Under the pieces are notes generated by a model. That model did not search any database, was not told the origin of the DNA, and saw only the letters and a program-made list of their open reading frames with translations. From the IMG/VR virus record IMGVR_UViG_3300046660_000219, positions 1-64,000 of that record: DNA of 64,000 bases, one strand, 5' to 3'. Position 1 is the first letter of the stretch. Each line of letters starts with the position of its first letter. Both the position numbers and the translations under genes were made by a program. Below, piece by piece: positions 18,068 to 61,511 of this stretch.

Positions 18068-18388
18068 ATGCACATTCTACACGCAGCTCCGCTGCAATCC
18101 GAAGCGATCATCAATGCCGCGCTTTGTTTGCGCGATTGCATCATGTCGTTCAGTACAAGTACTGACAGACCGTACGTCGCGGTGATTGTAAACACCGCCG
18201 ATATTGAACGCTTCGTCGATGATCAAGAACTGAAAGCGTTGAGTGGTGAAAGGGTAGTTGGCAATACGTTGCGGCTGACTTTCGCCGACATGAACGTCTA
18301 TCTAGATAAAGAGTATTTCGATCAACCTCTTCCGCCTGGACGTGCGTATATCGTCGCGGAGGATGCATTGGCGTCAGGCTATGCTTGA
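18068..18388 (+). CDS. Small protein resembling an isolated HK97-capsid A-domain segment
   Basis: VAVIVNTADIERF...TFADMNVYLD...LPPGRAYIVA. Confidence 0.45.
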   Translation: MHILHAAPLQSEAIINAALCLRDCIMSFSTSTDRPYVAVIVNTADIERFVDDQELKALSGERVVGNTLRLTFADMNVYLDKEYFDQPLPPGRAYIVAEDALASGYA

Positions 18389-19112
18389 CCCAGCCGAAAT
18401 TGATCTAACACCTGACGGTTCAATCGGTAACAGCGATGTCGTTCTGATAGATCGCTTTGCCGAACTTGCCGCGAGCTATCGCAAGCTTCACGAGGCGTAC
18501 ACTTACCGGATTGGTTCTGGTGATACCTCTTGTGCTGCGCGTGTACGCCAATACCCTATGCGTCAGCTAACCGTGGTCGAGAAGATCGGTGCTTTGCTGG
18601 ACTCAGCCGCGACGCATACCAAGATCGTAACGAAACTATACTACGCCCAAGAGCCAGTTTCCCGCCAAGAGCTTTGTGATATAGCGGGTATAATAGAGGC
18701 TTCATGGAACCCTACCATTGCTCGTATGCGGACGCTGACGAGCGTTAACATCACTTGTGTGAGTCGTTCGACGCACGTGTACGACGCCAAGACCGACACG
18801 GCGCAACGCGTGTCCTACTATGTTCTTGATGAAAGTGTACGGCAGCGGATTGACTTCGCTCTAGCACATAGCGTTGTAGCCTATGGTTCCGACGAAGCTA
18901 TTATTGCGGCGATCTTGGCGATGCTTCGTGTCAACCCTAGCATGTCAATAAATAGTATCGCTGATCGAACTGGCTATCGCGATATGCTGGATATCGTCAA
19001 GATCGTCGCCCGCCGGATGCTGATCAACGATTTGGTCAATCGTCGGGCCGGACTTTATCGCATCACCAGTGCCGGCTTAGCGCTTGTGCGCGCCGAAGGT
19101 AATTCGAATTGA
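18381..19112 (+). CDS. Putative winged-helix DNA-binding protein
   Basis: VSRQELCDIAGI and SMSINSIADRTG...LVNRRAGLYRITSAG wHTH-like segments. Confidence 0.55.
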   Translation: MLDPAEIDLTPDGSIGNSDVVLIDRFAELAASYRKLHEAYTYRIGSGDTSCAARVRQYPMRQLTVVEKIGALLDSAATHTKIVTKLYYAQEPVSRQELCDIAGIIEASWNPTIARMRTLTSVNITCVSRSTHVYDAKTDTAQRVSYYVLDESVRQRIDFALAHSVVAYGSDEAIIAAILAMLRVNPSMSINSIADRTGYRDMLDIVKIVARRMLINDLVNRRAGLYRITSAGLALVRAEGNSN

Positions 19113-19129
19113 AACCTAGGGAGGGCCTT

Positions 19130-19474
19130 ATGCAACACGACATCATCGCTATCATTCCGAAAGACGGGTTCACCGGTACGTACGTCGAGCCCGGCTCAAA
19201 AGCTGTTACCTTTAAAGAGGTAGATGAACACATCTGTAGGTTCCCTGTTGGCAGGATGAACCTGTTAAATCCGGAAGAGTCGCTTTGTTGTGGTGCTGGC
19301 GTCGTCAATCCGAAGGCCAAGCGCGGTCACGCTGCGTCCTATTGCTGCGAACATCTACCGCTGGTCGCCGTGAAGAACAAAGAGCCCAAAAAGAGCCGCC
19401 ACGGCACGCGCCAGCACTACCGCGAACAAGCGCCAGTTCTACAGTCCCGGTTCGAGGATTTCCTTGAAGGTTAA
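19130..19474 (+). CDS. GcrA C-terminal-domain-like protein
   Basis: EVDEHICRFPVG...CCG...SYCCEH matches the GcrA CxWPIGDP..FCG..PYCxxH pattern; no N-terminal HTH. Confidence 0.65.
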   Translation: MQHDIIAIIPKDGFTGTYVEPGSKAVTFKEVDEHICRFPVGRMNLLNPEESLCCGAGVVNPKAKRGHAASYCCEHLPLVAVKNKEPKKSRHGTRQHYREQAPVLQSRFEDFLEG

Positions 19475-19607: not shown

Positions 19608-20477
19608 ATGAGCAAGGGTAACACCGCTCGCAAGTCGGCTGATGTCATCGACATCAAGACGCATCCGAAGGCCGCCAAGAACACCAAGGCCACCGCTCCG
19701 GCGAAGGCTGAGAAGACCACCAAGCAAGCTAAGCCGGAAAAGGCTAAGGCCGTTGCCGCTACCAAGCCCAGCACGAAGACCCCGGCCGTTGCGCCGAAGG
19801 CTCCCAAGGCTGCTGCCAAGCCCACTAAGGCTGTGGTTCGTACCGCGACGATCGTTGGCAAGGCTACCGACGCCAAGGCCCCGCGTGCGGCTAAGGGTCA
19901 CTTCCTGTTTGCGTTTGGTAAGAGTATCGCGCAACAAGCGCTGATCACCCGCGAAGTTCCGGCCGGTCTGCTGGTTTCGAATAAGGTTCCGGCTGTCGCC
20001 AAGCAACTGCTAACGGAGGGCGGTATCCTTTCGAAGGCTGTCGCTAAAGAAGCTGGCCTGGACTTCGCCGCCGTGGTCGCCAAGGTTTCGGAAAGCCGCA
20101 AGGCTCACGTGATCGCCAAGGCCACGTCGCTGTCGGTTACGCCGTATGCCGACAAGGCTAATCTGATCCTCCCGGTTACCGCTGCGGCCTTGGCTAAGGG
20201 CGTGTCGGCTCCGGGTGCTAAGGCCTCTTCGGCTAAGAACATCCCGGCCGCCGCCGTGAAGGTTCCGGCCAAGGTGTCGATCAAGGAAAAAGCTATCACT
20301 CACGCTAAGAACGTGAAGGCTGAAAAGGGTAAGACTCAAGCTGCTCCTAGCAAGCCGCAAAAGTCTGCTACCAAGGCCACCGCTCCGGCGAAGGCTGAGA
20401 AGACCACCAAGCCGGTGAAGTCCGGTAAGACGAGCGCCAAGGTTGAGGCTTCGGCCAAGCCGAAGCGCACGAAGTAA
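19608..20477 (+). CDS. Second histone H1-like basic protein
   Basis: K/A/P/T-rich tails around a small globular core. Confidence 0.75.
   Translation: MSKGNTARKSADVIDIKTHPKAAKNTKATAPAKAEKTTKQAKPEKAKAVAATKPSTKTPAVAPKAPKAAAKPTKAVVRTATIVGKATDAKAPRAAKGHFLFAFGKSIAQQALITREVPAGLLVSNKVPAVAKQLLTEGGILSKAVAKEAGLDFAAVVAKVSESRKAHVIAKATSLSVTPYADKANLILPVTAAALAKGVSAPGAKASSAKNIPAAAVKVPAKVSIKEKAITHAKNVKAEKGKTQAAPSKPQKSATKATAPAKAEKTTKPVKSGKTSAKVEASAKPKRTK
19683..20412 (+). repeat. 43-bp exact direct repeat (19683-19725 and 20370-20412)
   Basis: ACCAAGGCCACCGCTCCGGCGAAGGCTGAGAAGACCACCAAGC occurs twice. Confidence 0.9.
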
Positions 20478-20602: not shown

Positions 20603-21724
20603 ATGCGTAATACCTTTAAAGAGCGCTCTCATACACGTGACGATCGCCACACGGCGCGGCGCAAAGCACGCCAAGACAATCAAGCACGCATCATCGTTGT
20701 TGGCGATCTGCATCTTGATTGGAACCCGCGCTTTTTGCAGCAAGGCGAGCACGACAAGTACACCTTGGACGTTATGCGTCACGCTGTAGCGCGGGCCGTA
20801 TTTCATGACGCTCACGCGATAGTGTTTACTGGGGATGTCTTCGACACGCCACAACCCTCACAAGATGCGCGCGCCGTCTTATCTACCTTTCTTAACGAGG
20901 TAGCACAGAACCACCCCGAACTAACCCTGTGGTTTTACACGGGCAATCACGATACTGAGTCAGCGACAGTCTACAGCCTGCGTTGGTTGAAGCCGCTCTG
21001 CGGAAAAGGTAGAGTGTTGCACAACGTGCGTGTCACAAACCGGCCGCAACGGATCAAAATCAACGGCGCTAACGTCCTGATCTTGCCGTGGTTTGAAGCC
21101 AACGAACAGAACAACGAAAATGTAAAGAAACTGCTTATCGGCGGGCGGCAACTAGTGTTCGCTCACAACGAGGTGCGCGGTGCTCTAATGGATAATGGTT
21201 GGGTTGCCGATGGCCTCGACCTGTCCACTACGCAACACGCCTGGGTCATCGGACACTTGCACACTGCACAAGACCTCCACCAAGGCATGGTTACCTACGT
21301 TGGTACGCCCACCGCCCGTCACATGAACCATAAGACGCGGCGGATGCTGCTAGTGACTTTGACTCATGACGATGGTACAATGACGGCCGTCGAAAAGCAG
21401 GATATTCCTGTACCGCAGCCTTACGAATTAGTGGAAGGCTTACCTCCGAAAAGGTATGAGCCAAACACTTACTATAAGGTTCACCTTGAGCTAGGCGAAC
21501 CCGTTCCAAACAACCCGCAAGTGGTTGCTACCAAGCGGATCGGCGAGACGTCCACCAAGGACAAGAAGAAAGCTCACATAAAGGTACCGGCAACGCTCCT
21601 GCCCAATCCCACCGATTGGTTGGTTTCGCGTTTGGCTCCGGAAAAACAGGAGCGCGGCCGCGCACTGTTGATGCGGGCTATCTCCGAAAGTAAACAGCAG
21701 TCGTTACACGATCAAGACGCATAA
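20603..21724 (+). CDS. Mre11/SbcD (gp47-like) metallophosphoesterase nuclease
   Basis: GDLH, GDVFD, GNHD, AH, GHLH motifs. Confidence 0.85.
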   Translation: MRNTFKERSHTRDDRHTARRKARQDNQARIIVVGDLHLDWNPRFLQQGEHDKYTLDVMRHAVARAVFHDAHAIVFTGDVFDTPQPSQDARAVLSTFLNEVAQNHPELTLWFYTGNHDTESATVYSLRWLKPLCGKGRVLHNVRVTNRPQRIKINGANVLILPWFEANEQNNENVKKLLIGGRQLVFAHNEVRGALMDNGWVADGLDLSTTQHAWVIGHLHTAQDLHQGMVTYVGTPTARHMNHKTRRMLLVTLTHDDGTMTAVEKQDIPVPQPYELVEGLPPKRYEPNTYYKVHLELGEPVPNNPQVVATKRIGETSTKDKKKAHIKVPATLLPNPTDWLVSRLAPEKQERGRALLMRAISESKQQSLHDQDA

Positions 21725-21734
21725 AGGTAGAAGC

Positions 21735-22709
21735 ATGGCGCGCTACAATGGCGATGAGCGCATCACCAAGGAAGGCTCGGCGCAAGTCGAGTTTATCCTT
21801 TCGGAGCTGCGCGACAACGACATTCGGAACGAAGTAAAAGGCGAGCACGTTTGGGTGTCGTGCCCATTCCACGGTAATGGTACGGAAACAACCGCGTCAC
21901 GTCGCATCAATCTCAGTGATCCGCGCTATCCAACTGGCGAGTCTTTCTGTTTCGCGTGCTCGGAAGGCAAGGTCAAATCGTGGAATGCTCTTGCCGCCGC
22001 GCGAGGCCTCGCGCCTATGGACAACGGCGGCGGGGAGCGCAACGAAAACTGGCTCCGCATCCCTAGTGAAGCCGAGTTTTACGGTACGCGTTCGGCCGGA
22101 GAGGTTCTGCGCCTCTACAAGCGTCCCAAAGGCTCCTGGCGCAACATCGGGGCGCGTATGATGGAGCGTATGGAGACCCGTCTTATCCAGTCCAAGGACG
22201 GGACACGGGTTTATTTCCCAGTAAAGGTAGGTGGCATTGTAGTAGGCCACTGCGATGCCTGCCCAACTGGGGAGAGCAAGGACAAGTACCTGCTATCAGG
22301 ACCGTGGTCCAACAGCGTCATGTACCCTTACGATTACGTGTCGTTGATGTTGCGCAGCGGTAGTTATCGATACGTGGTCATTGTAGAGGGTTTGAGGGAC
22401 GCTCTTACCCTTATTCAGCGTGGCGTGCCAGCTCTGTGTATGTGGGGTACAGGTGCGTGGACGCGAGAGAAAACCAAAGCTATACGCGCTCTTGGTGCTA
22501 TGGTTGTCATCGCCACGGATGACGACGCGGCCGGGGACGGTGCACGTCGCAAGCTACGGGAAGTATTGACGGATCTTGATCCGGTTGATTTAGAGTTCCA
22601 CAACGGCGGCGACCCTGGTAAACTCAAGCGACACGAAGTGGACAAGATCAAGACTATGCTTGAGCGCACAGCGCGTACGCGTGGGTTCGTTAACCGTAGA
22701 GCCGCCTAA
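21735..22709 (+). CDS. DnaG-type DNA primase
   Basis: CPFH...CFAC Zn finger; TOPRIM VEGLRD and DDDAAG. Confidence 0.85.
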   Translation: MARYNGDERITKEGSAQVEFILSELRDNDIRNEVKGEHVWVSCPFHGNGTETTASRRINLSDPRYPTGESFCFACSEGKVKSWNALAAARGLAPMDNGGGERNENWLRIPSEAEFYGTRSAGEVLRLYKRPKGSWRNIGARMMERMETRLIQSKDGTRVYFPVKVGGIVVGHCDACPTGESKDKYLLSGPWSNSVMYPYDYVSLMLRSGSYRYVVIVEGLRDALTLIQRGVPALCMWGTGAWTREKTKAIRALGAMVVIATDDDAAGDGARRKLREVLTDLDPVDLEFHNGGDPGKLKRHEVDKIKTMLERTARTRGFVNRRAA

Positions 22710-22805
22710 TTTAGTTAGGAAGCGTTGCTTTATAAACAGTAACGTAATTGTTCTAGCTATGTGAACCGCAGACGTTGGTTCGCCCGTCTTCAGGAGTATC
22801 TATCA

Positions 22806-25800
22806 ATGGCCGACGTCGTCACAACTAAGAACTATAATTTGTCCGCTAAGTTCGACGAATTCAATGCTAAATACTTTGACGGTCGCTTGGACAAGATCCG
22901 CGTTGAGTGGGCCGATCTACCCGGTGCGCACGCGCTGTTCCAAGCTTACACTTACGGTAAGACGGGTGGCTATGTCGCCAGCAAAGCCAAGATCCTGATG
23001 GATAACCGTTATGAGCGGACGGAGCGTCTGCTTGACGGTAATCTTATTCACGAAATGGTACACCAATGGGTGGCTCAGGTATTGCGCAATCCGCAAGCAG
23101 AAAACGGTGGCCACAACGATCAATTCTACGCCAAGTGCGAAGAGATTCAGAAGCGCGCCGGGTTCAACATTCCGATCAACGAAGAGGATGCTAGCGACAC
23201 TCTAGGCGCGTCGGAAATCGAGCCCGTGTCTATGGTTCTTCTAGACTCGATCGGCGGTAATGCAGATCGGATTTACTTTGCTGTGATCGCCAATCGTGAG
23301 GCCGACGAGCTACAAAGTGATGGTCGGGATGTTGCGGATAGCACTCTTAAGAGTATGCTCCAACGCCTAAAGCGTACGGATGCTTCTGCCGTGATCGCTA
23401 CCATTCGTGATCCCGATATTGCGCTGTGGTGGCTAGAGGCGTCGCAGCGCGTGCGTGTGTATGACGGTCTGCACGAACTACAGACCAATAGCTTCTATTC
23501 GAGTTCAGAGCTAAGCGATAAACTGCGCGGATTTATGGCGGGTGGCCCTGGTGCTACTATTATAGCGCAGACTCTGTCCTCTACTCCAAATCAAATAACC
23601 CCTGTTGCTCCTGCGCCGGAAATCGATGCGCCAGCGCCTAGTGTTGGGGAGGCTGCGCCCAAGCGCGATCTGATGACGCCGTTCCCCAACCTACCTAGTG
23701 CTGAACAACCCAATAGCAGCAACGCACAGCGTTTCCTTTACCGTAATGTCTTTGGTCAAGGCTCTGGTGTTGAATATCCTTACGTACTGGCGGGTGTTAC
23801 ATCCGAAGGCTTACCCACCCTTCAGGCCACAGATGATCTTACGGAACTGGCGGAGACTGGTTCCGACTATTTCGTCAACATCACGGTGTTAGCTAAAGGT
23901 AGTGAATTAAAAGCTAATCGCGGTGCAGACTTCGCTCGTGCGTTGTCGCGTATTACTGTTACATCTGTGGCGCAGGGCAAGAGCCACAACTACTCCGGCC
24001 AAGACATCCGTACGTGTACGCAGTTGGCTATGGAAAACGGCTTGTTCGCGCAAGATCGCCTGACATCTATGTTGTCGTGGCTTAACGGTATGAACCCGGC
24101 TGTGTCGATCGACGTCTCCAAGTTGACAGCATCTAATATTATTCCGTGGTTCCGTGAGGCTGTTTATGATGCGACTAGCGGTGACCAAAAATTCACGGCG
24201 TTCGTCGCTTTGGCTTGTGGTCTAGGCTCCGCAGACGGCTCGTTGTATCTTGCGGATCGCGTGCTTATGATGCGGCCGGATTATCGGCCCGGTATGGCCA
24301 TGAACGCTATCCCGTTGCTGTCGTATCTGGTCGAAGTGTTCCCAGAGAAATTCTATACCAATATCGCTACCTCAGATTGGTCTGACGACGATTTTGATCG
24401 TGTGTTTTCCAACAAGGGTTTGCTGAAGAAATACAAGGCGCAAGGCGGGGACGCTGGTGTTGTAGAGGCACCACCTAAACCGGAAAAGGAAACAAGCCCG
24501 GTTGATGCACCGGTACCGGAAACTATCCTTTTGCACACCAATCCCGATGGCGATCCGTACGATCGATATTCTATCGTCGTGCTGGACAAGATTGAGAATG
24601 GTAAAGGCTTCATCAAGCAAGTTCAGGCGCAAGATGCAGCGGAATTAGAGCAATACCGCGAAGCAATGATTTTCGATCGTAACGATCCTAAATACCAAGT
24701 GCGATCGTTCGACATCAGTGTCTTACTACTGGAATTGGACGCCGTTCTCCGACGCTTCGACGTACGTATCACGAAAGAGATGTTGCTTACCTTTGTTGAT
24801 AGTGCGCTGGATCGTGACGATTTCGAGTTAGTCGATAGCACGCGTGTCAAGACGCTGGAACAATGGTTCTACCAATGGTTCGGCGAAACCTTCAAGTTCG
24901 ACACAGCCCTTCCTTACACCAAGGCTCTGTTGCAGCTCGCGGGCGCTATCACCAACGCCAAGCGTGATGACCCGGAGTTCAATCGCTACGTCTTGAAAGA
25001 GATGCGCATTGGCGACGGTAAGGACTCTCGCGTACACAACGCTGGACTCATGGCCCAGTTGATGTGGAATGGTAGATTCGGCTCCTCGACTGACTCGCTT
25101 GGTCTGTGGTTGTTGCGTTTGCTGCCTCCCGTTAGTACGGAGCTGATGGACGCCGGCCTCATCAACTATGAGGCTATTAGCTACACTTTCTCGCAGACGT
25201 CTGTTGCTACGTTGCGGGAACGTTGGTTGGAACTGCAAAAGCCTCCGACGCCATCGGTAATTGAGTACACGCAAGACGACGTCACGGAAAAGGGCTACAA
25301 GCCTACGCCGCGCATCTTTGACGAACGTCCGGATGCTGAAGACCTTCGTAAGGTGCAAGCGGATTACAGTATCAGTAAGGACGATTACACAGTGTTTTTG
25401 ATGCACGGTGGTCGTTGGCAAGTGTTCCTCAATCCTGGCGTTACTAGCCCTGTCCTTGAACCGGAGTCTACGGTGCGAGCACCCAAAGTCACTGCGCCCA
25501 CGGGTGCGCGATCTAATCTACAAATGGTACCGGATCCGGAAACCAAACGCCTCGTGCTTCGGGTGGAACCGGGCGACGAGCCGGAAGGTAAAAACCGTAT
25601 GGGTCAGGTTGGTAAACGTGAGGCTCGTCCGATCGCGGCGCTTCTTAACGTGGTTATGGCTAATGACCTCGACGCCGTCCTAGATTTGATCAAGGATGGG
25701 CGACGGAAAGAAGCGGCGCAGAAGGCGGCTCATATATCCGCACGCATGTTGCCGTACTTCAAAAGAACGGTAGAAGAGAAGCAACCGTTCGCGGGACTTC

Positions 25801-25967
25801 AACCGTGGATCGACGCCAACTTCGGCGAGGGTCTGCAAGGCCAGAAAGCGGCCATGTACGCCCTAGAGGGTCAACGGGCTAAGTTGACCACCAAACAGCG
25901 CCAGTACTTGACCCAAGAGAAGAACAAGCGAGAGATCTTCGGCCTGCTGGGCATCAAGTGGAAATAG
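22806..25967 (+). CDS. Large protein with N-terminal SprT-like metalloprotease domain
   Basis: FDEFNAKYFDGRL...HEMVH...GHNDQF; CAGGAG RBS before 22806. Confidence 0.8.
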   Translation: MADVVTTKNYNLSAKFDEFNAKYFDGRLDKIRVEWADLPGAHALFQAYTYGKTGGYVASKAKILMDNRYERTERLLDGNLIHEMVHQWVAQVLRNPQAENGGHNDQFYAKCEEIQKRAGFNIPINEEDASDTLGASEIEPVSMVLLDSIGGNADRIYFAVIANREADELQSDGRDVADSTLKSMLQRLKRTDASAVIATIRDPDIALWWLEASQRVRVYDGLHELQTNSFYSSSELSDKLRGFMAGGPGATIIAQTLSSTPNQITPVAPAPEIDAPAPSVGEAAPKRDLMTPFPNLPSAEQPNSSNAQRFLYRNVFGQGSGVEYPYVLAGVTSEGLPTLQATDDLTELAETGSDYFVNITVLAKGSELKANRGADFARALSRITVTSVAQGKSHNYSGQDIRTCTQLAMENGLFAQDRLTSMLSWLNGMNPAVSIDVSKLTASNIIPWFREAVYDATSGDQKFTAFVALACGLGSADGSLYLADRVLMMRPDYRPGMAMNAIPLLSYLVEVFPEKFYTNIATSDWSDDDFDRVFSNKGLLKKYKAQGGDAGVVEAPPKPEKETSPVDAPVPETILLHTNPDGDPYDRYSIVVLDKIENGKGFIKQVQAQDAAELEQYREAMIFDRNDPKYQVRSFDISVLLLELDAVLRRFDVRITKEMLLTFVDSALDRDDFELVDSTRVKTLEQWFYQWFGETFKFDTALPYTKALLQLAGAITNAKRDDPEFNRYVLKEMRIGDGKDSRVHNAGLMAQLMWNGRFGSSTDSLGLWLLRLLPPVSTELMDAGLINYEAISYTFSQTSVATLRERWLELQKPPTPSVIEYTQDDVTEKGYKPTPRIFDERPDAEDLRKVQADYSISKDDYTVFLMHGGRWQVFLNPGVTSPVLEPESTVRAPKVTAPTGARSNLQMVPDPETKRLVLRVEPGDEPEGKNRMGQVGKREARPIAALLNVVMANDLDAVLDLIKDGRRKEAAQKAAHISARMLPYFKRTVEEKQPFAGLQPWIDANFGEGLQGQKAAMYALEGQRAKLTTKQRQYLTQEKNKREIFGLLGIKWK

Positions 25968-42587: not shown

Positions 42588-44417
42588 ATGATTCGAGGTT
42601 TTGGTAGCTACAGCGAGCGTGGCGGTGTTATTCAAGCTAGAGAAACCGCCTCTTCGCAACGGCGCGGCGCTGAGCTTGCCGTGCGTGGTCGCGCTGGTCG
42701 TAATGTTGAGACTGCTAGCGGTGGCGCTGCTGTTTCGTCCATGGGTTTTGGTGGTTTGACCGCCGACGATCTTAGCTTGAGCTACATCGGTGGTTCGGCT
42801 AGTCGTAACACCCAGAACACCTATAGCGCTCCGCCAGAAGTCTACAATTATTACGCTGCCATCTTCCGTGAAGATCATGTGTGTGGTGCGGCTGTGGAGC
42901 TGCGCTCTAACATTCCGTACGCGGCAGGCATGCGCCTGTCTGGTACCAAGGACGCTAGCCGTCTGAAGGTCTATCAAGATACCGTTTCCGCACTCCGCAT
43001 GGAGTCGATGATGGCGCGTATCTCGATCGAGCGTGACGCCATGGGTGCGTTCTTCGGCTCGTTGGATTTCAACGCAGAGAAGAAGACCTTCGACTCCATT
43101 CTACCCTTATCGCGTCTGGACATCACGAAGATCAAGTATCCGCCTGTACACGGTCTTGATCCTGTCGTGGACGTTAAGCCTAGCCAACTCATCATGGATT
43201 TGCTTGCGGATGCTAACGATCCGCGCGTCAAGCCGTTGCTAGACTGTGTTCCGGACTTCCTGAAGACCGCACAAGGCACAAACGGTGTAGCCGTCCCCTC
43301 TAAAAACCTCGTGTGGATCGCACGTCCGCACATCGATCCGCGCTACAATTCTATCTATCACCGCATCCTACCTATTTTCTTGATCGAACGTGCGTTGATG
43401 CGCGGTACCATTGAAGGCGCGCACCGCCGTCAAAAACCTATCCTACACCTAATGCTAGGACAGGGCGAAGAATGGGCTCCTACTCCGGAAGAATTTGACT
43501 TCGTCTCAGGCCTGTTCACTGATGCTGACGCCGACCCGCTTGGCGCTATCGTCGCGACGCGTGACAACATTAGCGTCAACGAAGTGCGCAGCCCACAAGA
43601 CTTCTGGAAAATCACGGACATCTCCGATCAGACGCTTACCTTTAAGCTACGTGCTCTAGGGATTAGCGAAGCCTTCCTGTCGGCCGACGCTTCATTCGCT
43701 AACGCGGACTCTGCCGTTACCGTTTTCATCGAAGGTCTGCGAGCTGAACGTAACCAAGTGGAAAAGCAAGTCTTCTATGACAAGTTGTTTCCGCAAATCG
43801 CCATGGCTAACTCGTTCTTCAAAGGTAAGAAGGGCGCTGCTGGCTCTAACATGTCGCTCAATTCGATTGATGACATCAGCAACCTCGACGTTCCTACCGT
43901 TGAATGGCGGCGTTCGCTCCAACCAGAAGGCGACGGCGCGTACATGGATCTGTTGGCCGCGCTAGAGGCTCACAATGTACCTATTCCGGTGCGTATGTTT
44001 GCTGCTGCGTCCGGCATCGATTTGAATACTCTTTTGGAAGCTTCCGAACAAGACGTCAAGGACCGTAAGGCCATTGCTGATTGGCGGGAGAAAATCAAGG
44101 AATTCCAGCCTGAAGATCCTGCGATGATGGGTGCTGAAGGTGGTGGAGAGTTTGCTAGAGCCTCGCTCTTCGATGCACTGGCGTCGCCTAACTCTCTGCG
44201 TCCGATTGGTGTTCTCAATCGTGATTACGGTGACGTAGAACGGTACGATCATGCACCGCTAGACGGTCGTGGTCATCGCCAACCGGCTTCGAAGAAATGG
44301 AAGCTTGAGAAGCGTGACGAAATACATCGTCTTCTGGCGCGCGTAACCGCGCAAGTGGCGCAAAAAGAGAACTACCACGCCCGCCAACGCGGGCTGTTGG
44401 TCGACGGTCAAGTGTAG
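42588..44417 (+). CDS. Probable portal protein
   Basis: 609 aa; IFREDHVCGAAVEL, KLRALGISEAFLSADASFANA, PTVEW patterns typical of portals; head-gene context. Confidence 0.65.
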   Translation: MIRGFGSYSERGGVIQARETASSQRRGAELAVRGRAGRNVETASGGAAVSSMGFGGLTADDLSLSYIGGSASRNTQNTYSAPPEVYNYYAAIFREDHVCGAAVELRSNIPYAAGMRLSGTKDASRLKVYQDTVSALRMESMMARISIERDAMGAFFGSLDFNAEKKTFDSILPLSRLDITKIKYPPVHGLDPVVDVKPSQLIMDLLADANDPRVKPLLDCVPDFLKTAQGTNGVAVPSKNLVWIARPHIDPRYNSIYHRILPIFLIERALMRGTIEGAHRRQKPILHLMLGQGEEWAPTPEEFDFVSGLFTDADADPLGAIVATRDNISVNEVRSPQDFWKITDISDQTLTFKLRALGISEAFLSADASFANADSAVTVFIEGLRAERNQVEKQVFYDKLFPQIAMANSFFKGKKGAAGSNMSLNSIDDISNLDVPTVEWRRSLQPEGDGAYMDLLAALEAHNVPIPVRMFAAASGIDLNTLLEASEQDVKDRKAIADWREKIKEFQPEDPAMMGAEGGGEFARASLFDALASPNSLRPIGVLNRDYGDVERYDHAPLDGRGHRQPASKKWKLEKRDEIHRLLARVTAQVAQKENYHARQRGLLVDGQV

Positions 44418-44430
44418 GAAGGGTAAGACC

Positions 44431-44700
44431 ATGTCAACCCCCGGTCCTATTCGCTACGTTCTGTTGGCCGATATAGACGCTATGGACGGGGACACTGTGC
44501 CAGTGTTTCTGTCTACCTTTATTAACGAGCACACGTGGGTAAAAGCTGATCGCTGGCAAGCGACGGCTGTACGCGATAAGGCGATGCTGTTCCACAACGA
44601 ATGGACCGCACGCTTCTTCTATTCGCATTGGCTTACTGCTGATGCGCAAGCCACCTTCCGTGTTGCTACCGTGCGACTGCCCGTTAAAGGCCGCGCTTAA
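44431..44700 (+). CDS. Small hypothetical protein
   Basis: 89-aa ORF in operon. Confidence 0.55.
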   Translation: MSTPGPIRYVLLADIDAMDGDTVPVFLSTFINEHTWVKADRWQATAVRDKAMLFHNEWTARFFYSHWLTADAQATFRVATVRLPVKGRA

Positions 44701-44718
44701 TCGCAAGGAAATAGTATT

Positions 44719-45084
44719 ATGAGTGTAGCTGTTCTGGTGTCTTCGGACCTAACTAATGCGGGTGGCGCGTTGGTCACTGATACCTTTTCTACTGTCACCG
44801 GTACGACGTATACAGTGCAGTCTACTGACGCCGGCAAGATCTTGCGCTTCACTTCGGCGACGGCTGTAACGGTAACTTTACCAGCATTGACTGCGGGCTT
44901 CAATTGTCTGTGGCGTCAAGTTGGTGCTGGTAAGATTAGTTTCGTCGTAGCTGTGACTGATCCTGTGCAAACCTTGCGCAACACGGACGCTTTTTCAAAG
45001 TCGTCTGGCCAGTACGCCGAGGGCAGTCTGTCCGTGGATCTGGTCACGACTGATTGGTACCTGTCAGGTTCGTGCGGCGCGTAG
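44719..45084 (+). CDS. Small fibre-type beta protein carrying the AVLxxxDLxxAGG tag
   Basis: MSVAVLVSSDLTNAGG; TYTVQSTDAGKILRFT...QVGAG. Confidence 0.7.
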   Translation: MSVAVLVSSDLTNAGGALVTDTFSTVTGTTYTVQSTDAGKILRFTSATAVTVTLPALTAGFNCLWRQVGAGKISFVVAVTDPVQTLRNTDAFSKSSGQYAEGSLSVDLVTTDWYLSGSCGA

Positions 45085-45103
45085 CTGTTATTAGGAAACA
45101 GTA

Positions 45104-45232
45104 ATGAGCAAGCTCGCTAGACGAACGGTGCTTAAGCGTGGTGTACCTGCAAACGCACTGTATAATCGTAGCGGTTCGTTGGTGCTGACCAACAAGACCG
45201 GCTCTCTAATCCTGACCAAAAAGGTAAGCTAA
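45104..45232 (+). CDS. 42-aa MSKLxRR peptide
   Basis: Hand translation MSKLARRTVLKRGVPANALYNRSGSLVLTNKTGSLILTKKVS; AGGA RBS; paralogue at 52124. Confidence 0.75.
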   Translation: MSKLARRTVLKRGVPANALYNRSGSLVLTNKTGSLILTKKVS

Positions 45233-45233
45233 C

Positions 45234-46898
45234 ATGGCGAACGCCCGTGGCTATTTGGCCGACTACATTAACGGCCTGACCGGTGACGAGCGTATCGAGG
45301 TTGGCAATGCGCTAGCTGCGATTATCTCCTACGATCCGGCGGCACTGGACCTCTATACCCGCTTCACTTCTGCACCCAATGAGGCGTACAAGCGTGCAAT
45401 CTCAAACCGTATCCGCCTGCTGAAAGAGGCGAGCATTTGGCCCACCATTGACGTCACCTACGCTCTTGCGGCTGCTGATAGCCAAGCAGCGGCGCGTAAC
45501 TGGGTAGCGGACACGAAAAACCTAACGGCTACTGGCTCACCTACCTTTACGGCCAACAAAGGCTTCACGGGTAATGGCACGAGCGCATACCTCGATACCG
45601 GCGTCAATCCTGGTGCTGGCGGCACGAAGGCTACGCAAAATTCAGCGTGCATAAGCTTCTGGTGTTTGTCGCTGCGTAACCCGGACGCTAGTATTACTGT
45701 TGGTGCACGTAACGCCGGCGCAACCTCGTTCATGGACATGAACCCGCGCTTGACGGGCGAGCTGATCCTAGGTCGCCTGAACAACGCTGGCGGTGGTTTA
45801 TTCAACAACACCGTCACGCTAGGCCATTTTACCATTAATCGTCCAAACTCAACGACGATTGAAATCTATCGCGACGGCCAATTGATCGGCTCTAGTACCG
45901 TAGCGTCAACCACGCCGCCTAACGCTAATCTGTTGATCCTGGCGCGACAAGTTGCCGGTGGCGCAGCAGAGTCTTTCTCGTCTGATCAGATCGCTATGGT
46001 TACAATTGGTTCGGCTCTGACCTCGCAACAGGTTGCCGCTCTCTACAAGGCCGATTGCGCCTACCTTGACGCTATTGCAGGTTCTAGCGACCTCATCGCG
46101 GCGTTTGGTGATAGCCTTACGGCTACCGGATCGAGCACCTATCTGGCTACGGCCGGTGGCTTGTTCAGTCCGACGCGTTCACCTGCTAACAATGGTATCG
46201 GTGGGCAGACCAGTACGCAGGTTGCCGCACGTCAAGGTGGTCTACCGGTAAAGCTAACGGTAACTAGCAATCAAATTCCGGCGTCGGGCACTGTTGCAGT
46301 GACAGCTAAGTCCATCGGTGACTACGGCGTCGACGATGGCCCAATCACGGTGAACGGCGCACAAAGTCTGGCTGGTACTTTGGCTGGTATTCCCGGTACG
46401 TTGGCGCGTGATGGTGCTGGCGCGTACACTTTCACGCGTACGGCTTCCGGCTCTATCACCGCATGTCCGCCGAACTCAGTCTTTACTGTCAGTCTTGCGA
46501 TTAACAGTAAGCAGATGACGCAGTGGCTTTGGGTTGGTACGAACTTCACGAGCCGTGCTTCTACCTTGGCTGATGCTGCCGCGATGATTGCGTTCCTGGG
46601 TCATAGTCGCTACCTTATCGTTGGTCCGTTGACCAAGACGACGGACAGTCCTTCCGTGGTCGCGGAAAAGGTTCAAACCAACACGGATCTAGCCGCCTTG
46701 TATGGCTCGAAATTCCGCAACATGTTGTCCATCCTGCAAGCCAGTAACGATGGTTCGGCGAACGACCTTGCGGACGTCGCCGCCGGCTATACGCCGCGTT
46801 CGCTTCGTGTGGATGAAGTTCACCTTACCACTACTGCTAATAACACTATCGTTGCCCCTACGATGTACAACGCGCATCTGGCCAACGGTTATGCTTAA
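45234..46898 (+). CDS. LamG/ConA-like lectin plus SGNH hydrolase, putative virion appendage protein
   Basis: FTGNGTSAYLDTG; GDSL, GIGGQ, GTN, DEVH. Confidence 0.75.
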   Translation: MANARGYLADYINGLTGDERIEVGNALAAIISYDPAALDLYTRFTSAPNEAYKRAISNRIRLLKEASIWPTIDVTYALAAADSQAAARNWVADTKNLTATGSPTFTANKGFTGNGTSAYLDTGVNPGAGGTKATQNSACISFWCLSLRNPDASITVGARNAGATSFMDMNPRLTGELILGRLNNAGGGLFNNTVTLGHFTINRPNSTTIEIYRDGQLIGSSTVASTTPPNANLLILARQVAGGAAESFSSDQIAMVTIGSALTSQQVAALYKADCAYLDAIAGSSDLIAAFGDSLTATGSSTYLATAGGLFSPTRSPANNGIGGQTSTQVAARQGGLPVKLTVTSNQIPASGTVAVTAKSIGDYGVDDGPITVNGAQSLAGTLAGIPGTLARDGAGAYTFTRTASGSITACPPNSVFTVSLAINSKQMTQWLWVGTNFTSRASTLADAAAMIAFLGHSRYLIVGPLTKTTDSPSVVAEKVQTNTDLAALYGSKFRNMLSILQASNDGSANDLADVAAGYTPRSLRVDEVHLTTTANNTIVAPTMYNAHLANGYA

Positions 46899-47016
46899 TA
46901 GTAGAATCGAGGTTGCACCAACCTTGGTAATTTAGTGCATGCAAGACGTGGCCCCGTTGCTTCATTGCTTCGGGGCCATTGTCGTATCCAGATTATCATT
47001 TGCGGTGGGACAACAC

Positions 47017-47790
47017 ATGGGGCGTAGGTCCAACTTCAAGCGCCATCCGCGCGACCTGTATAAGACGTGCGACATACGCGCCATCATACCTTTGTTGCCA
47101 CATATCAAACACGTTTCTGTTTACGCGGAAACGTGCGCAGGCGACTCCGATCTGGTGCGCCTGTTGCTACCACATGGCAAGCGACCAATTGCGCAGTACG
47201 ACATCGTTCCACTAAATAGAAGTGTAGAGCGACGGGACGCGTTCTCGCTTACTCGTGCTGATATGCGTGGCTGTGGTACTATTATCACCAATCCGCCGTG
47301 GGATAGGAAGCTGTTACATCCGCTGATAATGCACTTCCTGTCGCTGGGCGTGGACGTGTGGTTGCTGTTTGACGCGGCATGGTGTCAGACTTTGCAATCC
47401 GTGCCGTTTATGCCATACTGTCGCAAGGTGGTAGCAGTCGGTCGGGTCTGTTGGTTTCCCAAGACCAAACAGACCGGCAAAGAAGATGCTAGCTGGTACC
47501 ATTTCTCACCGTACAATGTCGGCGAAGACACCCTGTTCTTTGGCCGTATACCTTCCGACGCCATAAAGGGACAACATGGCTCGCACCTACAGTTTCAAGA
47601 CGAAAGCCGAGGCCGCAAGGTTCAAGCCCACGTACGAGGCGGCCAACAACGCCTTCCACAACGGCGACAGCATAATGCTGGACTCGGACTTCGAAGCCCT
47701 CAAAGAAGCGCTGCTGCCGTGGTATCCGGAAATAGAAAGCCACATCGGCGCAACGCAAAACGCTTCAGCACGCATGGTGCCTCTGCCTAA
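47017..47790 (+). CDS. DNA amino-methyltransferase (NPPW motif)
   Basis: MGRRSNF..RDLYKT, ETCAGDSDL, IITNPPW. Confidence 0.8.
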   Translation: MGRRSNFKRHPRDLYKTCDIRAIIPLLPHIKHVSVYAETCAGDSDLVRLLLPHGKRPIAQYDIVPLNRSVERRDAFSLTRADMRGCGTIITNPPWDRKLLHPLIMHFLSLGVDVWLLFDAAWCQTLQSVPFMPYCRKVVAVGRVCWFPKTKQTGKEDASWYHFSPYNVGEDTLFFGRIPSDAIKGQHGSHLQFQDESRGRKVQAHVRGGQQRLPQRRQHNAGLGLRSPQRSAAAVVSGNRKPHRRNAKRFSTHGASA

Positions 47791-49429
47791 TGCGATGACC
47801 AGTCAGGTTAAGGCGCGCAAAGATACGATTCACAAGTACGTGGATCGCATCGGACCTGACACCCACGGTTCAGCCAAAGCCGATGGCTCATCGTTGCAGA
47901 TCGTCAACGTCAAAGGCGTCAAGAAATTGTACTCTAGAGGTGACGCCAAGACCAATACCGGTCAAGACGTTAGCCATCTAATACCATTGTTGAAGATTGG
48001 TGAATGTCCGCCCGGTTACGCGATCCGCTTTGAGTGCGTGCTGACACGCGCGGCCTTTGAGCAAGTAAAAGTCATCACCAAGGGTAAGCGCATCAAGGAT
48101 TACACAGCGGCGCGTAACGTGGCGTCCAGTGGGATCGTCAACAACTCCCGCCCAGACCCTGCGATAGTTGCTCTCGCGTCTTGCCCGGCTTTTACTATTT
48201 ACAAGCCGAAGATGACGCCGCGCCAAGCCTTCGCCAGACTAGTTGAGCTGGGTTGGGAAGTGCCGCTCAATCAACCAATCACCGATCTGTCCCCTAGAGC
48301 ACTAACCCTATTGCTGAAGACGTGGGAGCGTACCGTTCCGTACGACATCGACGGTATCGTGCTGTCAAAGAACGTGCACGAAGCGCCAGTAGCCGGTAGC
48401 AATCCGCACCACAGCGTTGCGTTCAAGGTAGATAAGCCGCCACAAAAGGTAGTTGTCAGCAAGGTTGTTTGGGAGGCTTCACAATATGGTAGACTCAAAC
48501 CAGTCGCCCATTTCGTTACACCCGTCAACCTCAACGGAGCCGAGGTCAGTAAAGCCACCGCTCACGACGCAAGAATGGTTCGCACTAAACGTATTGGGCC
48601 AGGAGCAGAAATCTTCATTATTCGGTCCGGGGAAGTTATTCCGAAGATCGTCGGTGTAGCCAAGCCTGCACTTAAAGCGTCGTTCCCTAAAAAGGGTACG
48701 TACACGTGGAACGGTGCGAACATCGAGGCAGTGGGTGACAACTACCGGGCCGAGATCCTGACCCGTCAGCGTGTAGCGTTCTTCGCCGACATCGGCGTGC
48801 TTGGCCTAGGCGAGTCCGTGGCGTCCAAGCTGACGGCCCTGTCGATCCCAGAAATCGCCCGCAAGAGCCCGATTGAGCTACGGGCGCTGGGTGTGGGCCA
48901 AGCGGACTCAGTAAAGCTCCCAGCGGCCATTAAAAAGGCCCTGGAGACGACCTCCATGCCACGGCTCATGGCCGCGTCGTCGGTGTTTGGTTCTGGGTTC
49001 GGTCTGACCAAGGCCAATGCTGTGTGGGCTGTGCTAAAAGGTAACCCACCTAAAACCCGCGCGGAGCTTGTCGAACGCGTGGTCGCGCTGCATGGCTTCT
49101 CCAAGGTATCCGCTGAGTCGTTCGCCGCACGTTATGCGCAGTGGCTAAAGTTCCTCAAGGACTTACCCTTTAAACCGATCGTATCTGGCGGCTCTGGTAA
49201 ATTGGTCGGTAAGCTGTATGCGTTTTCCGAGTTCCGCGACAAGGAGCTGGAGAACTTCATCATAGACCAGGGTGGTCAAGTTAAAGGTAGCGTATCGAAA
49301 GCAACAACTGCTGTGTTCGCCCCTCCCGGTGCTAACAGCACTAAAGCGCAAAAGGCTAGATTGCTACAGGTGCCAATCGTACCGCCTAGCCAAGCGCGCG
49401 ACTTTATCGGGTATGAGCCTAAACCATAG
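47576..49429 (+). CDS. NAD+-dependent DNA ligase
   Basis: DSDFE, KADG, YDIDGIV, AFK, IRSGEVIPKI, HhH and BRCT-like tail. Confidence 0.9.
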   Translation: MARTYSFKTKAEAARFKPTYEAANNAFHNGDSIMLDSDFEALKEALLPWYPEIESHIGATQNASARMVPLPNAMTSQVKARKDTIHKYVDRIGPDTHGSAKADGSSLQIVNVKGVKKLYSRGDAKTNTGQDVSHLIPLLKIGECPPGYAIRFECVLTRAAFEQVKVITKGKRIKDYTAARNVASSGIVNNSRPDPAIVALASCPAFTIYKPKMTPRQAFARLVELGWEVPLNQPITDLSPRALTLLLKTWERTVPYDIDGIVLSKNVHEAPVAGSNPHHSVAFKVDKPPQKVVVSKVVWEASQYGRLKPVAHFVTPVNLNGAEVSKATAHDARMVRTKRIGPGAEIFIIRSGEVIPKIVGVAKPALKASFPKKGTYTWNGANIEAVGDNYRAEILTRQRVAFFADIGVLGLGESVASKLTALSIPEIARKSPIELRALGVGQADSVKLPAAIKKALETTSMPRLMAASSVFGSGFGLTKANAVWAVLKGNPPKTRAELVERVVALHGFSKVSAESFAARYAQWLKFLKDLPFKPIVSGGSGKLVGKLYAFSEFRDKELENFIIDQGGQVKGSVSKATTAVFAPPGANSTKAQKARLLQVPIVPPSQARDFIGYEPKP

Positions 49430-61124: not shown

Positions 61125-61511
61125 ATGGTAGCCTTAGAGAACCCGTTCCGCACAATCCGTCTTAGCGCCAAGCTAATGCGCCGTGAGGGTTACCACTACG
61201 TGCCAACCTATGCACATTGGTGTCCTGGCTGTGAAGAGCTGCATGATTATGCCGTAGATCAACCATTTCGTAACGGCGCGCGTTGGTCGTTTTCTGGACC
61301 TCCGGATAGACCTAGCTTTTCACCTTCCATGAACATCTCGATCGGTGAGCCTGTCGAAGAGCGCTGTCATTATTACCTGACTGTTGGTGTCTTACAATTC
61401 TGTCCCGATAGCACGCATGCTTTAGCCGGACAATCTGTGCCACTTCCCGATATCCCACAACATATTTGGCTACGCGCCGGTATTAACCTTTCTTCGGAGA
61501 CGTCAACATGA
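61125..61511 (+). CDS. DUF6527-like Cys/His protein
   Basis: WCPGCEELH, WSFSG..PSFSPSM, RCHY..G.LQFC.DSTH. Confidence 0.75.
   Translation: MVALENPFRTIRLSAKLMRREGYHYVPTYAHWCPGCEELHDYAVDQPFRNGARWSFSGPPDRPSFSPSMNISIGEPVEERCHYYLTVGVLQFCPDSTHALAGQSVPLPDIPQHIWLRAGINLSSETST

What the first reader, a model, noticed from the sequence alone, without database searches (positions are those of the whole stretch)
18381..19474. GcrA C-terminal domain without its DNA reader, paired with a wHTH protein
Seen: 19130 has the Cys/His GcrA C-terminal pattern but no N-terminal HTH; the adjacent upstream gene has wHTH-like segments. Known: Caulobacter GcrA binds sigma70 through its CTD and methylated GANTC through its NTD, and phiCbK-like phages carry GcrA homologues. 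Inference: a sigma70 hijacker or dominant-negative cell-cycle effector, possibly a split activator. It also implies an alphaproteobacterial host.
Basis: partly seen in the sequence, partly recalled or inferred. Interest (0 to 1): 0.6.

Follow-up and report, generated by a model that had tools for sequence, protein, structure and literature searches.

The report
Phage GcrA sigma-binding domain without DNA reader

Summary
Gene 19130-19474 (114 aa, P0002) is a real but very divergent homologue of the GcrA sigma-interacting domain (SID).

- **Homology:** Pfam GcrA matches below its cut-off (E 0.0057). A SID profile built without P0002 ranks it first of 2603 six-frame ORFs of the phage (E 1e-5). 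It scores 22.5 bits against at most 11.0 for 5000 shuffles. hhalign gives 96% probability.
- **Fold:** in a scan of 48,161 solved chains, only GcrA SID chains match the model (5YIX_B, Z 5.9).
- **Binding model:** a complex model with controls places it on the published GcrA site of Caulobacter sigma-70 domain 2 (0.66, best control 0.00).
- **No DNA reader:** no GcrA DNA-binding domain exists in this gene or anywhere in the 206-kb phage.
- **Upstream gene:** 18381-19112 is an orphan predicted to hold two winged-helix domains. Only adjacency links it to P0002, so the split-activator idea is untested.
- **Host:** an alphaproteobacterial host is plausible but not shown.
- **Novelty:** SID-only GcrA paralogues occur in many alphaproteobacterial genomes and viral metagenomes, so the architecture is not unique, only uncharacterised.

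Verdict: a new variant of a known kind, of moderate interest.

The parts
18381..19112 (+). P0001, an orphan protein of 243 aa counted from the ATG at 18381 (in-frame alternatives are GTG 18342 and ATG 18363). It is predicted to have a helical N-terminus and two winged-helix-like domains, at about residues 65-150 and 170-243. Its start overlaps the stop of the upstream ORF 18068-18388.
   Evidence: ORF list and sequence. HTH_24 E 0.012 and HTH_AsnC E 0.057, both below cut-off. MarR PHROG E 0.026. All structural neighbours of the ESM Atlas model are wHTH families. No relatives found.
19119..19125 (+). Shine-Dalgarno-like GGGAGGG, 4 nt before the ATG of P0002 and 6 nt after the stop of P0001. The two genes are probably co-transcribed.
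   Evidence: Read directly from the sequence.
19130..19474 (+). P0002, 114 aa plus a TAA stop: a GcrA-like sigma-interacting-domain-only protein.
19130..19204 (+). Residues 1-25. They hold no HTH and align with the C-terminal end of the GcrA linker (the motif I-I-P-K-D-G ... E-P against L-V-P-E-G ... R-P-E).
   Evidence: Alignments A2 and A4. The DBD HMM is negative. Low model confidence for residues 2-10.
19205..19372 (+). Residues 26-81, the SID core. Predicted zinc ligands are C36 (19235-19237), C54 (19289-19291), C72 (19343-19345) and H75 (19352-19354). Spacing is C-x17-C-x17-C-x2-H, against C-x14-C-x9-C-x2-H in GcrA. The longer loops are shared with P0003.
   Evidence: pLDDT is 76-90 over residues 21-80. 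5YIX_B gives Z 5.9, rmsd 2.3 A, with all 48 residues aligned. GcrA ligand positions come from PMC5887438.
19373..19423 (+). Residues 82-98, a basic patch (K82, K84, K87, K88, R90, R94, R98). It sits where the GcrA basic patch (157-163) follows the SID.
   Evidence: Sequence. The role of the GcrA basic patch is described in PMC9976885.
19424..19471 (+). Residues 99-114, an extra acidic and hydrophobic tail with no counterpart in GcrA or in P0003. It could be a partner-binding peptide; this is inference only.
   Evidence: Alignment A4. pLDDT 52-68.

Best explanation
P0002 is a phage-encoded, highly diverged copy of the GcrA sigma-interacting domain alone. It comprises the linker end, a CCCH zinc finger and a basic patch.

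**Proposed mechanism.** It is made from the early/replication gene block. It folds around one zinc ion and docks on domain 2 of the host's housekeeping sigma factor, on region 1.2 and the coiled coil leading to the non-conserved region. GcrA binds the same site. P0002 therefore travels with sigma-70 holoenzyme to promoters.

Without a DNA-binding domain it cannot read methylated GANTC. Two effects are expected:
1. It excludes host GcrA from sigma-70, blunting the host's S-phase GcrA regulon.
2. It gives weak, sequence-independent help to open-complex formation through its basic patch, as shown for DBD-less GcrA.

**Shown here:** homology, conserved zinc ligands, fold, absence of any DBD, and gene context.

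**Modelled only:** binding to sigma-70.

**Inferred:** competition with GcrA, the effect on transcription, and the host.
For: **Homology**
- Pfam GcrA matches P0002 and its only relative P0003 in the same region of the profile.
- The independent SID HMM gives E 1.1e-5 and ranks P0002 first of 2603 ORFs.
- 5000 shuffles reach at most 11.0 bits against 22.5 for the real sequence.
- hhalign gives 96% probability.
- The nearest ESM Atlas clusters are short GcrA-domain proteins.

**Fold**
- Of 48,161 representative solved chains, only two score Z 2 or more. Both are GcrA SID chains: 5YIX_B (Z 5.9, rmsd 2.3 A, 48 of 48 residues) and 7YE2_G (Z 4.3).

**Binding model**
- ipSAE is 0.66 (three runs, 0.55-0.69) and the best of 3 controls is 0.00.
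- The runs agree in at least 60% of their contacts, and the partner's pLDDT is 56-63.
- This mark was reached by 51 of 78 solved complexes and 2 of 108 mismatched pairs.
- Sigma residues 128-149, 403-421 and 460-463 contact P0002 residues 28-31, 37-39, 43-51 and 75-81. These correspond to the published GcrA interface.

**Literature**
- GcrA lacking its N-terminal domain still localises to sigma-70 promoters (PMC4647560).
- DBD-less GcrA keeps weak activity in promoting promoter melting, attributed to the basic patch (PMC5887438, PMC9976885).

**Phage context**
- The phage encodes no sigma-70 region 2.
- P0002 lies in a block with SbcD-like nuclease and primase genes.
Against: - No experiment supports binding. 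The complex pass may be the model's memory of 5YIX.
- The fold model used an alignment that contained GcrA SIDs.
- Several interface residues differ from GcrA: D124 to R42, P125 to M43, W120 to F38, F132 to C53. Both zinc-finger loops are longer (x17/x17 against x14/x9). D124A weakened binding in GcrA.
- The Pfam score is below the gathering cut-off.
- The host is unknown, so the real sigma partner was not the one modelled.
- The nearest phages with cultured hosts, including the Rhizobium phages, lack the gene.
Confidence: 0.6

Rival explanations
1. Split activator. P0002 anchors to sigma-70, and its extra C-terminal tail or N-terminus recruits the adjacent tandem winged-helix protein P0001. 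P0001 supplies DNA recognition at phage promoters. This would be a two-protein analogue of full-length GcrA, or of T4 AsiA/MotA.
For: - The two genes are 17 nt apart with a strong ribosome-binding site between them.
- P0001 is predicted to be wHTH.
- P0002 has a 16-residue tail that other SIDs lack.
- The only relative, P0003, is also followed by a small HTH gene that overlaps its end.
Against: - Adjacency within a long same-strand block of small early genes is weak evidence.
- P0001 has no relatives, so co-occurrence cannot be tested.
- The HTH neighbour of P0003 is unrelated to P0001, and its 110-aa upstream neighbour shows no similarity to P0001.
- Neither P0001 nor P0005 resembles the GcrA DBD.
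- HTH genes are frequent in phage early regions.
Confidence: 0.12
2. The SID fold is kept but the partner has changed. P0002 binds something other than housekeeping sigma-70, such as another host protein or a phage protein, and is no longer a sigma cofactor.
For: - Interface positions are substituted, and two enlarged loops are shared with P0003.
- Divergence is extreme: one relative among 1.84 billion representatives.
- The Pfam score is below the cut-off.
Against: - The hydrophobic anchor positions are conservatively kept: L110 to F28, L113 to V31, K119 to R37, W120 to F38, and P39, G41, Y71.
- The basic patch is retained.
- The complex model reproduces the canonical site, with controls at 0.00.
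Confidence: 0.2
3. Non-functional remnant of a full-length phage GcrA that lost its DBD and is decaying.
For: Cultured phages with a SID carry full-length genes. P0002 keeps a stub of the linker.
Against: - The frame is intact, with a strong ribosome-binding site.
- All four zinc ligands and the basic patch are kept.
- P0003 has the same architecture and loop insertions at only 43% identity (phmmer), which implies selection on the short form.
- SID-only genes are recurrent and coexist with full-length GcrA in 5 of 5 genomes checked.
Confidence: 0.05
4. Chance resemblance of a Cys-rich small ORF to the GcrA motif.
For: The Pfam hit is sub-threshold. Foldseek E-values are 0.9-1.2.
Against: argue against chance: it is the top hit of 2603 ORFs, it scores twice the best shuffle, hhalign gives 96%, and GcrA SID chains are the only structural matches among 48,161 chains.
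Confidence: 0.03

Closest known systems
Caulobacter crescentus GcrA (PF07750; PDB 5YIX, 7YE1, 7YE2), specifically its sigma-interacting domain plus basic patch, residues about 88-173
   Same: - CCCH zinc finger with the C-R/K-aromatic-P-x-G, C-G and Y-C-x-x-H signatures.
- Hydrophobic residues at the positions of L110 and L113.
- A basic patch directly after the domain.
- A predicted loop-rich fold that superposes on 5YIX_B (Z 5.9).
- A modelled docking site on sigma-70 region 1.2 and the coiled coil to the non-conserved region.
   Different: - No N-terminal m6A-GANTC-reading HTH and no long linker.
- Zinc-finger spacers of 17 and 17 residues instead of 14 and 9.
- D124, P125 and F132 are replaced.
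- A 16-residue acidic/hydrophobic tail is added.
- The Pfam score is below the gathering cut-off.
Phage-encoded full-length GcrA homologues: phiCbK gp222 and relatives, Brevundimonas phage Bajun, Rhizobium phage RHph_X2_24, Synechococcus phage Ssp-JY42
   Same: Phage-borne and located in or near replication genes. They carry the same SID, and the literature presumes they act in host takeover (PMC3556154).
   Different: Those proteins are 169-235 aa with the DBD, and score well above the Pfam cut-off (phiCbK 88.5 bits). P0002 has the SID only and shows no tblastn match in the phage collection.
Uncharacterised SID-only GcrA paralogues of Alphaproteobacteria (57-aa Micavibrio-type and 106-133-aa Methylocystis-type) and short viral GcrA-domain clusters in the ESM Atlas
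   Same: The same DBD-less architecture ending in a basic tail. They coexist with a full-length GcrA in the cell, just as P0002 would during infection of a GcrA-bearing host.
   Different: Those keep the canonical M-C-R-W-P-I-G motif, the x14/x9 spacing and Pfam scores of 46-60 bits. P0002 and P0003 form a separate, far more divergent branch with enlarged loops. I found no published function for any of them in the papers searched.
T4 AsiA (with MotA) and other phage sigma-70-binding appropriators
   Same: Works like, by inference: a small early phage protein that binds the host's primary sigma factor to redirect transcription. In T4 it acts together with a separate DNA-binding protein.
   Different: No sequence or fold relationship. 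AsiA binds sigma region 4, whereas the GcrA SID binds domain 2. The resemblance is recalled from general knowledge and was not tested here.

Membership tests
GcrA (Pfam PF07750) | Score at or above the Pfam gathering cut-off (26.9 bits) | tested here: not met
   17.5 bits, E 0.0057, profile positions 93-147 of 155. The six-frame search gives 15.8 bits.
GcrA (Pfam PF07750) | N-terminal HTH DNA-binding domain that reads m6A-GANTC | tested here: not met
   Only 25 residues precede the SID, and an in-frame stop lies upstream. A DBD HMM built from 31 sequences gives no hit in P0002, P0001 or any of 2601 phage ORFs; the best E is 0.11.
GcrA (Pfam PF07750) | CCCH zinc ligands of the sigma-interacting domain (C118, C133, C143, H146) | tested here: met
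   C36, C54, C72 and H75 are invariant columns in the 38-sequence alignment. The spacing differs: x17/x17/x2 against x14/x9/x2.
GcrA (Pfam PF07750) | SID fold as in 5YIX chain B | tested here: met
   The AF2 model has pLDDT 76-90 over residues 21-80. 5YIX_B gives Z 5.9, rmsd 2.3 A, 48 of 48 residues. No non-GcrA chain among 48,161 reaches Z 2 or more. Caveats: this is a prediction, and the alignment contained GcrA SIDs.
GcrA (Pfam PF07750) | Conserved sigma-70-contacting residues | tested here: inconclusive
   Kept or conservatively replaced: L110 to F28, L113 to V31, K119 to R37, W120 to F38, and G123, Y142. Changed: D124 to R42, P125 to M43, F132 to C53.
GcrA (Pfam PF07750) | Binds domain 2 of the primary sigma factor | tested here: inconclusive
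   The complex model with RPOD_CAUVC 128-487 scores 0.66 against a best control of 0.00 and shows the canonical interface. It is a model only, may reflect memory of 5YIX, and the true host's sigma is unknown.
GcrA (Pfam PF07750) | C-terminal basic patch after the SID | tested here: met
   Seven Lys/Arg in residues 82-98. The position matches GcrA 157-163.
Winged helix-turn-helix regulators (MarR / AsnC / HTH_24 type), for the upstream protein P0001 | A significant match to a wHTH family profile | tested here: not met
   HTH_24 scores 15.6 bits against a cut-off of 21.9. HTH_AsnC gives E 0.057 and the MarR PHROG E 0.026. The PDB sequence search is empty.
Winged helix-turn-helix regulators (MarR / AsnC / HTH_24 type), for the upstream protein P0001 | H1-H2-H3 plus beta-hairpin wing fold | tested here: inconclusive
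   The ESM Atlas model (pTM 0.66) has only wHTH families among its ten listed structural neighbours, all at TM below 0.4 by query. My AF2 model shows the helix-helix-helix-hairpin order but has pLDDT 40.

The most novel reading that the evidence does not exclude
P0002 and P0001 together form a phage sigma-appropriation pair. The diverged SID clamps onto host sigma-70 domain 2, displacing GcrA. Its unique C-terminal tail recruits the orphan tandem winged-helix protein, which reads phage middle or late promoters. This would be a modular, two-gene reinvention of GcrA, and a domain-2 counterpart of T4 AsiA/MotA. The many cellular SID-only paralogues would then be a general class of sigma-70 adaptor or competitor.
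Probability: 0.1. Interest if true: 0.8.

Novelty: new variant of a known kind. Interest (0 to 1): 0.45.

Why it matters
GcrA is the only known activator that pre-binds sigma-70 domain 2. Work on truncated GcrA showed that the SID alone reaches promoters and weakly promotes promoter melting.

A natural DBD-less SID in a phage gives a direct way to ask two questions. Do phages use this surface of sigma-70 for host takeover? And what do the widespread but unstudied SID-only paralogues in Alphaproteobacteria do?

If P0002 competes with GcrA, it would be a phage tool that uncouples the host cell cycle from transcription. It could also serve as a probe for GcrA function.

Tried and rejected
**Searches for relatives**
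- The word search for P0002, for P0001 and for the P0002+P0003 alignment found only the queries themselves.
- tblastn and megablast against the cultured-phage collection found nothing.
- Pattern scans of viral and genome contigs with P0001, P0002 or A1 found no relatives.
- I used the exhaustive representative search because the word search and family scans left P0002 open. It gave one relative, P0003.
- Five related jumbo phages (RHEph12, RHph_N46, PaBG, Yoloswag, RSL1) hold no SID and no P0001 homologue. The tool warns that an empty answer shows little.

**Other negative or rejected results**
- PDB sequence searches were uninformative.
- A second weak PF07750 hit at genome position 97517-97621 was rejected as chance. 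It contains a stop, lies opposite a 213-aa ORF, and matches only the low-complexity linker.
- A weak SID-HMM hit at 63432 is an Arg-rich low-complexity stretch and was rejected.
- The single-sequence fold of P0001 was unusable (pLDDT 40).
- BLASTP shows no internal repeat in P0001. NCBIfam gave nothing useful.
- The phage has no CcrM-type methyltransferase, no sigma-70 region 2 and no CtrA box.
- Relatives cannot be drawn for a virus record.

**Not run**
- Read laying was not used. No holder on record is RNA.
Full report
**Setting.** The window is the first 64 kb of a 205,908-bp IMG/VR virus record rated complete. The DNA comes from a rhizosphere metagenome. Mean G+C is 53.8%.

The portal protein (42588-44417) is about 31% identical to portals of jumbo myophages. 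These include the Rhizobium RHEph12 group, Pseudomonas PaBG, Erwinia Yoloswag, Dickeya JA29 and Ralstonia RSL1. No nucleotide-level relative exists among cultured phages.

The finding lies in a long + strand block. Small orphan genes (14-19.5 kb) are followed by a Lys/Ala/Pro-rich protein, an SbcD-like nuclease, a Toprim primase and a 1068-aa protein with an SprT-like domain. This is an early/replication region.

**The observation.** P0002 (19130-19474, 114 aa) starts 4 nt after a GGGAGGG site. Its frame is closed upstream, so it has no hidden N-terminal extension.

Its sequence carries C36-R-F-P-V-G, C53-C54-G and Y71-C72-x-x-H75. In Caulobacter GcrA the sigma-interacting domain (SID) is a loop-rich CCCH zinc finger. 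Its ligands are C118, C133, C143 and H146, with spacing C-x14-C-x9-C-x2-H (PMC5887438).

In a 38-sequence alignment of SIDs from phages and bacteria, C36, R37, P39, C54, C72 and H75 of P0002 fall in invariant columns.

**Is it more than chance?**
- Pfam GcrA hits P0002 below its cut-off: E 0.0057, 17.5 bits against 26.9, profile positions 93-147.
- The word search found nothing. I therefore spent the exhaustive search, which found one relative among 1.84 billion representatives. This is P0003, 88 aa, E 5.5e-4, 43% identity. P0003 gives its own sub-threshold GcrA hit over the same profile region.
- I collected 56 SID-bearing loci from viral and genome contigs. From them I built a SID HMM that contains neither P0002 nor P0003. 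Against all 2601 six-frame ORFs of the phage plus the two proteins, P0002 is the top hit at E 1.1e-5 and P0003 scores E 0.005.
- Composition-preserving shuffles of P0002 reach at most 11.0 bits, against 22.5 for the real sequence.
- Profile-profile comparison of P0002+P0003 with the SID alignment gives 96% probability and E 4e-9.
- The ESM Atlas places P0002 next to clusters of 78-93-aa proteins that carry PF07750. Several of these clusters are viral.

I conclude that the homology is real, although the protein is an outlier of the family.

**Anatomy.**
- Residues 1-25 align with the last part of the GcrA linker.
- Residues 26-81 are the SID.
- Residues 82-98 are a basic patch. It sits where the GcrA basic patch (157-163) lies. 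In GcrA that patch contacts the non-template discriminator strand, and it explains the residual activity of DBD-less GcrA (PMC9976885).
- Residues 99-114 are an extra acidic/hydrophobic tail found in no other SID.
- Both zinc-finger spacers are longer (17 and 17 residues). P0003 shares this feature, so it marks a sub-branch.

**Fold.** AlphaFold2 with the 38-row alignment gives pLDDT 76-90 over residues 21-80. Foldseek's two best PDB chains are GcrA chains, though not at significant E-values.

An exhaustive VIA-align scan of 48,161 representative chains finds only two chains with Z of 2 or more, and both are GcrA SID. 5YIX_B gives Z 5.9, rmsd 2.3 A, with all 48 residues aligned to model residues 19-81. 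7YE2_G gives Z 4.3. The model used no templates. Its alignment did contain GcrA SIDs, so this result is not fully independent of the sequence evidence.

**Binding.** I modelled P0002 with residues 128-487 of Caulobacter RpoD, the construct crystallised with GcrA SID.
- The score was 0.66 (three runs, 0.55-0.69), and the best of three controls scored 0.00.
- The runs agree in at least 60% of their contacts, and the partner's pLDDT is 56-63.
- The mark was reached by 51 of 78 solved complexes and 2 of 108 mismatched pairs.
- The confident interface covers sigma residues 128-149, 403-421 and 460-463, and P0002 residues 28-31, 37-39, 43-51 and 75-81.
- These map onto the published contacts. On sigma these are L128, L129, G133, A136, A143, D146, T147, T403, E411 and E418. 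On GcrA they are L110, L113, K119, W120, P125, F130, F132, Y142 and V149-Y151.

The tool itself warns that a pass for a family with a solved complex shows likeness, not that this copy binds. Several interface positions are changed in P0002: D124 to R42, P125 to M43 and F132 to C53.

**No DNA reader.** A GcrA-DBD HMM built from 31 distinct sequences finds nothing in P0002, in P0001 or in any ORF of the 206-kb genome. The best E-value is 0.11, at a site I reject as chance. The phage also lacks a CcrM-type methyltransferase and any sigma-70 region 2.

**The upstream gene.** P0001 (18381-19112; the start may be 18342 or 18363) has no relatives by any search.
- Family hits are weak: HTH_24 E 0.012 and MarR PHROG E 0.026.
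- The ESM Atlas model (pTM 0.66) has only winged-helix families among its listed structural neighbours. The aligned ranges point to two domains, at about residues 65-150 and 170-243.
- My own single-sequence model was poor but shows the helix-helix-helix-hairpin order.

So "wHTH-like" is reasonable but not proven. The link to P0002 is adjacency only, with a 17-nt gap. On its short contig, P0003 is preceded by an unrelated 110-aa ORF and followed by an overlapping 60-aa HTH gene of a different type. This is mildly suggestive and no more.

**How common is the architecture?**
- Of the 56 SID loci, 19 have no DBD in the same frame. The sample is biased by the search pattern.
- These include 57-aa proteins in Micavibrio-like and other alphaproteobacterial MAGs, and 106-133-aa proteins in Methylocystis-like genomes.
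- In five such genomes, each also encodes a full-length GcrA. Their SID-only genes pass the Pfam cut-off at 46-60 bits.
- Cultured phages with a SID carry full-length genes. These are the phiCbK group, Bajun, RHph_X2_24 and two Synechococcus phages.
- I found no paper describing the function of a SID-only protein.

The architecture is therefore recurrent and uncharacterised. P0002 is an unusually divergent viral example.

**Mechanism.** GcrA without its N-terminal domain still goes to sigma-70 promoters (PMC4647560) and keeps weak activity in promoting promoter melting. The most likely action of P0002 is therefore to occupy the GcrA site on the host's sigma-70. This would exclude GcrA and add a mild, sequence-independent stabilisation of open complexes. 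This part is inference. I give 0.6 to the sigma-binding cofactor or competitor model as a whole, and about 0.9 to the SID homology alone.

**Host.** Evidence for an alphaproteobacterial host:
- the taxonomic spread of SIDs;
- GANTC at 0.67 of its Markov expectation, 307 sites against 460;
- the rhizosphere source;
- Rhizobium phages as the best-covering portal hits, and the portal and NAD-ligase genes lying near each other (adjacent in those phages, about 3 kb apart here).

Evidence against certainty:
- portal identity is only about 31%, and Pseudomonas, Erwinia and Ralstonia phages score equally;
- the Rhizobium relatives lack the gene;
- full-length GcrA-like genes occur in Synechococcus phages, and SID hits occur on contigs labelled Patescibacteria, Saccharibacteria, Salinibacterium and Hydrogenedentota;
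- no CtrA box is present.

**Verdict.** The split-activator idea and the host claim remain open. This is a new, divergent variant of a known domain family, in an architecture that is common but unstudied. Interest is moderate.

Noticed in passing
window 19608-20477 (+): A 289-aa Lys/Ala/Pro-rich protein lies immediately downstream of P0002. It has histone-H1/AlgP-like low-complexity repeats and no Pfam, PHROG or NCBIfam match. It may be a DNA-coating protein.
   Followed up: partly
window 20603-25967 (+): A replication/repair block: an SbcD-like metallophosphoesterase (20603-21724), a Toprim primase (21735-22709) and a 1068-aa protein whose N-terminus is an SprT-like metalloprotease domain (22761-25967).
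   Followed up: partly
window 57411-58571, 59636-60880, 61508-62689 (+): Three paralogous lysophospholipase L1-like (GDSL-type) esterase genes lie in a row (phrog_8480, E 1e-37 to 1e-50). This is an unusual triplication for a phage.
   Followed up: no
whole phage genome (G000): Some palindromes are strongly avoided against a Markov expectation: CTGCAG 2 observed against 36 expected, GTCGAC 9 against 65, GGATCC 12 against 37, and GANTC 307 against 460. This suggests restriction pressure from the host and possibly a GANTC-methylating host.
   Followed up: partly
G000 ends (1-127 and 205782-205908): The 'direct terminal repeat' is exactly 127 bp. That is the size of an assembler k-mer overlap, so it more likely marks a circular assembly than true phage termini.
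   Followed up: partly
L002 740-1178: P0003 is the only relative of P0002. On a 2.4-kb Logan contig it is overlapped at its 3' end by a 60-aa HTH gene (weak Sigma70_r4_2, HTH_23 and DUF2802 hits). A dCMP deaminase follows, so this is probably another phage.
   Followed up: partly
L035, L040, L045, L047, L049, L051-L054, L056-L062, L065-L067; genomes G001-G005: DBD-less GcrA SID paralogues of 57-133 aa occur in many alphaproteobacterial MAGs and genomes. In 5 of 5 genomes checked they coexist with a full-length GcrA. I found no function reported for them.
   Followed up: partly
L008 (Synechococcus phage Ssp-JY42); L025, L037, L051, L055, L068: GcrA-like genes or SIDs lie outside Alphaproteobacteria and their phages. 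They occur in two Synechococcus phages and on contigs labelled Paceibacterota, Patescibacteria, Saccharibacteria, Salinibacterium and Hydrogenedentota. Mis-binning or prophages were not excluded.
   Followed up: no
G000 97517-97621 (+), locus L003: A weak PF07750 hit to linker positions 32-66 (E 3.5e-4). It contains a TAA stop and lies antisense to a 213-aa ORF. I judged it a low-complexity chance match.
   Followed up: yes
G000 107119-108496 (-): A cluster of four tRNA genes: Leu-TAG, Met-CAT, Leu-TAA and Arg-TCT.
   Followed up: no
window 42588-49429 (+): The portal gene is followed within 3 kb by an NAD-dependent DNA ligase. The two genes are directly adjacent in Rhizobium phages RHEph12 and RHph_N46. 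This may be a trace of shared ancestry.
   Followed up: partly
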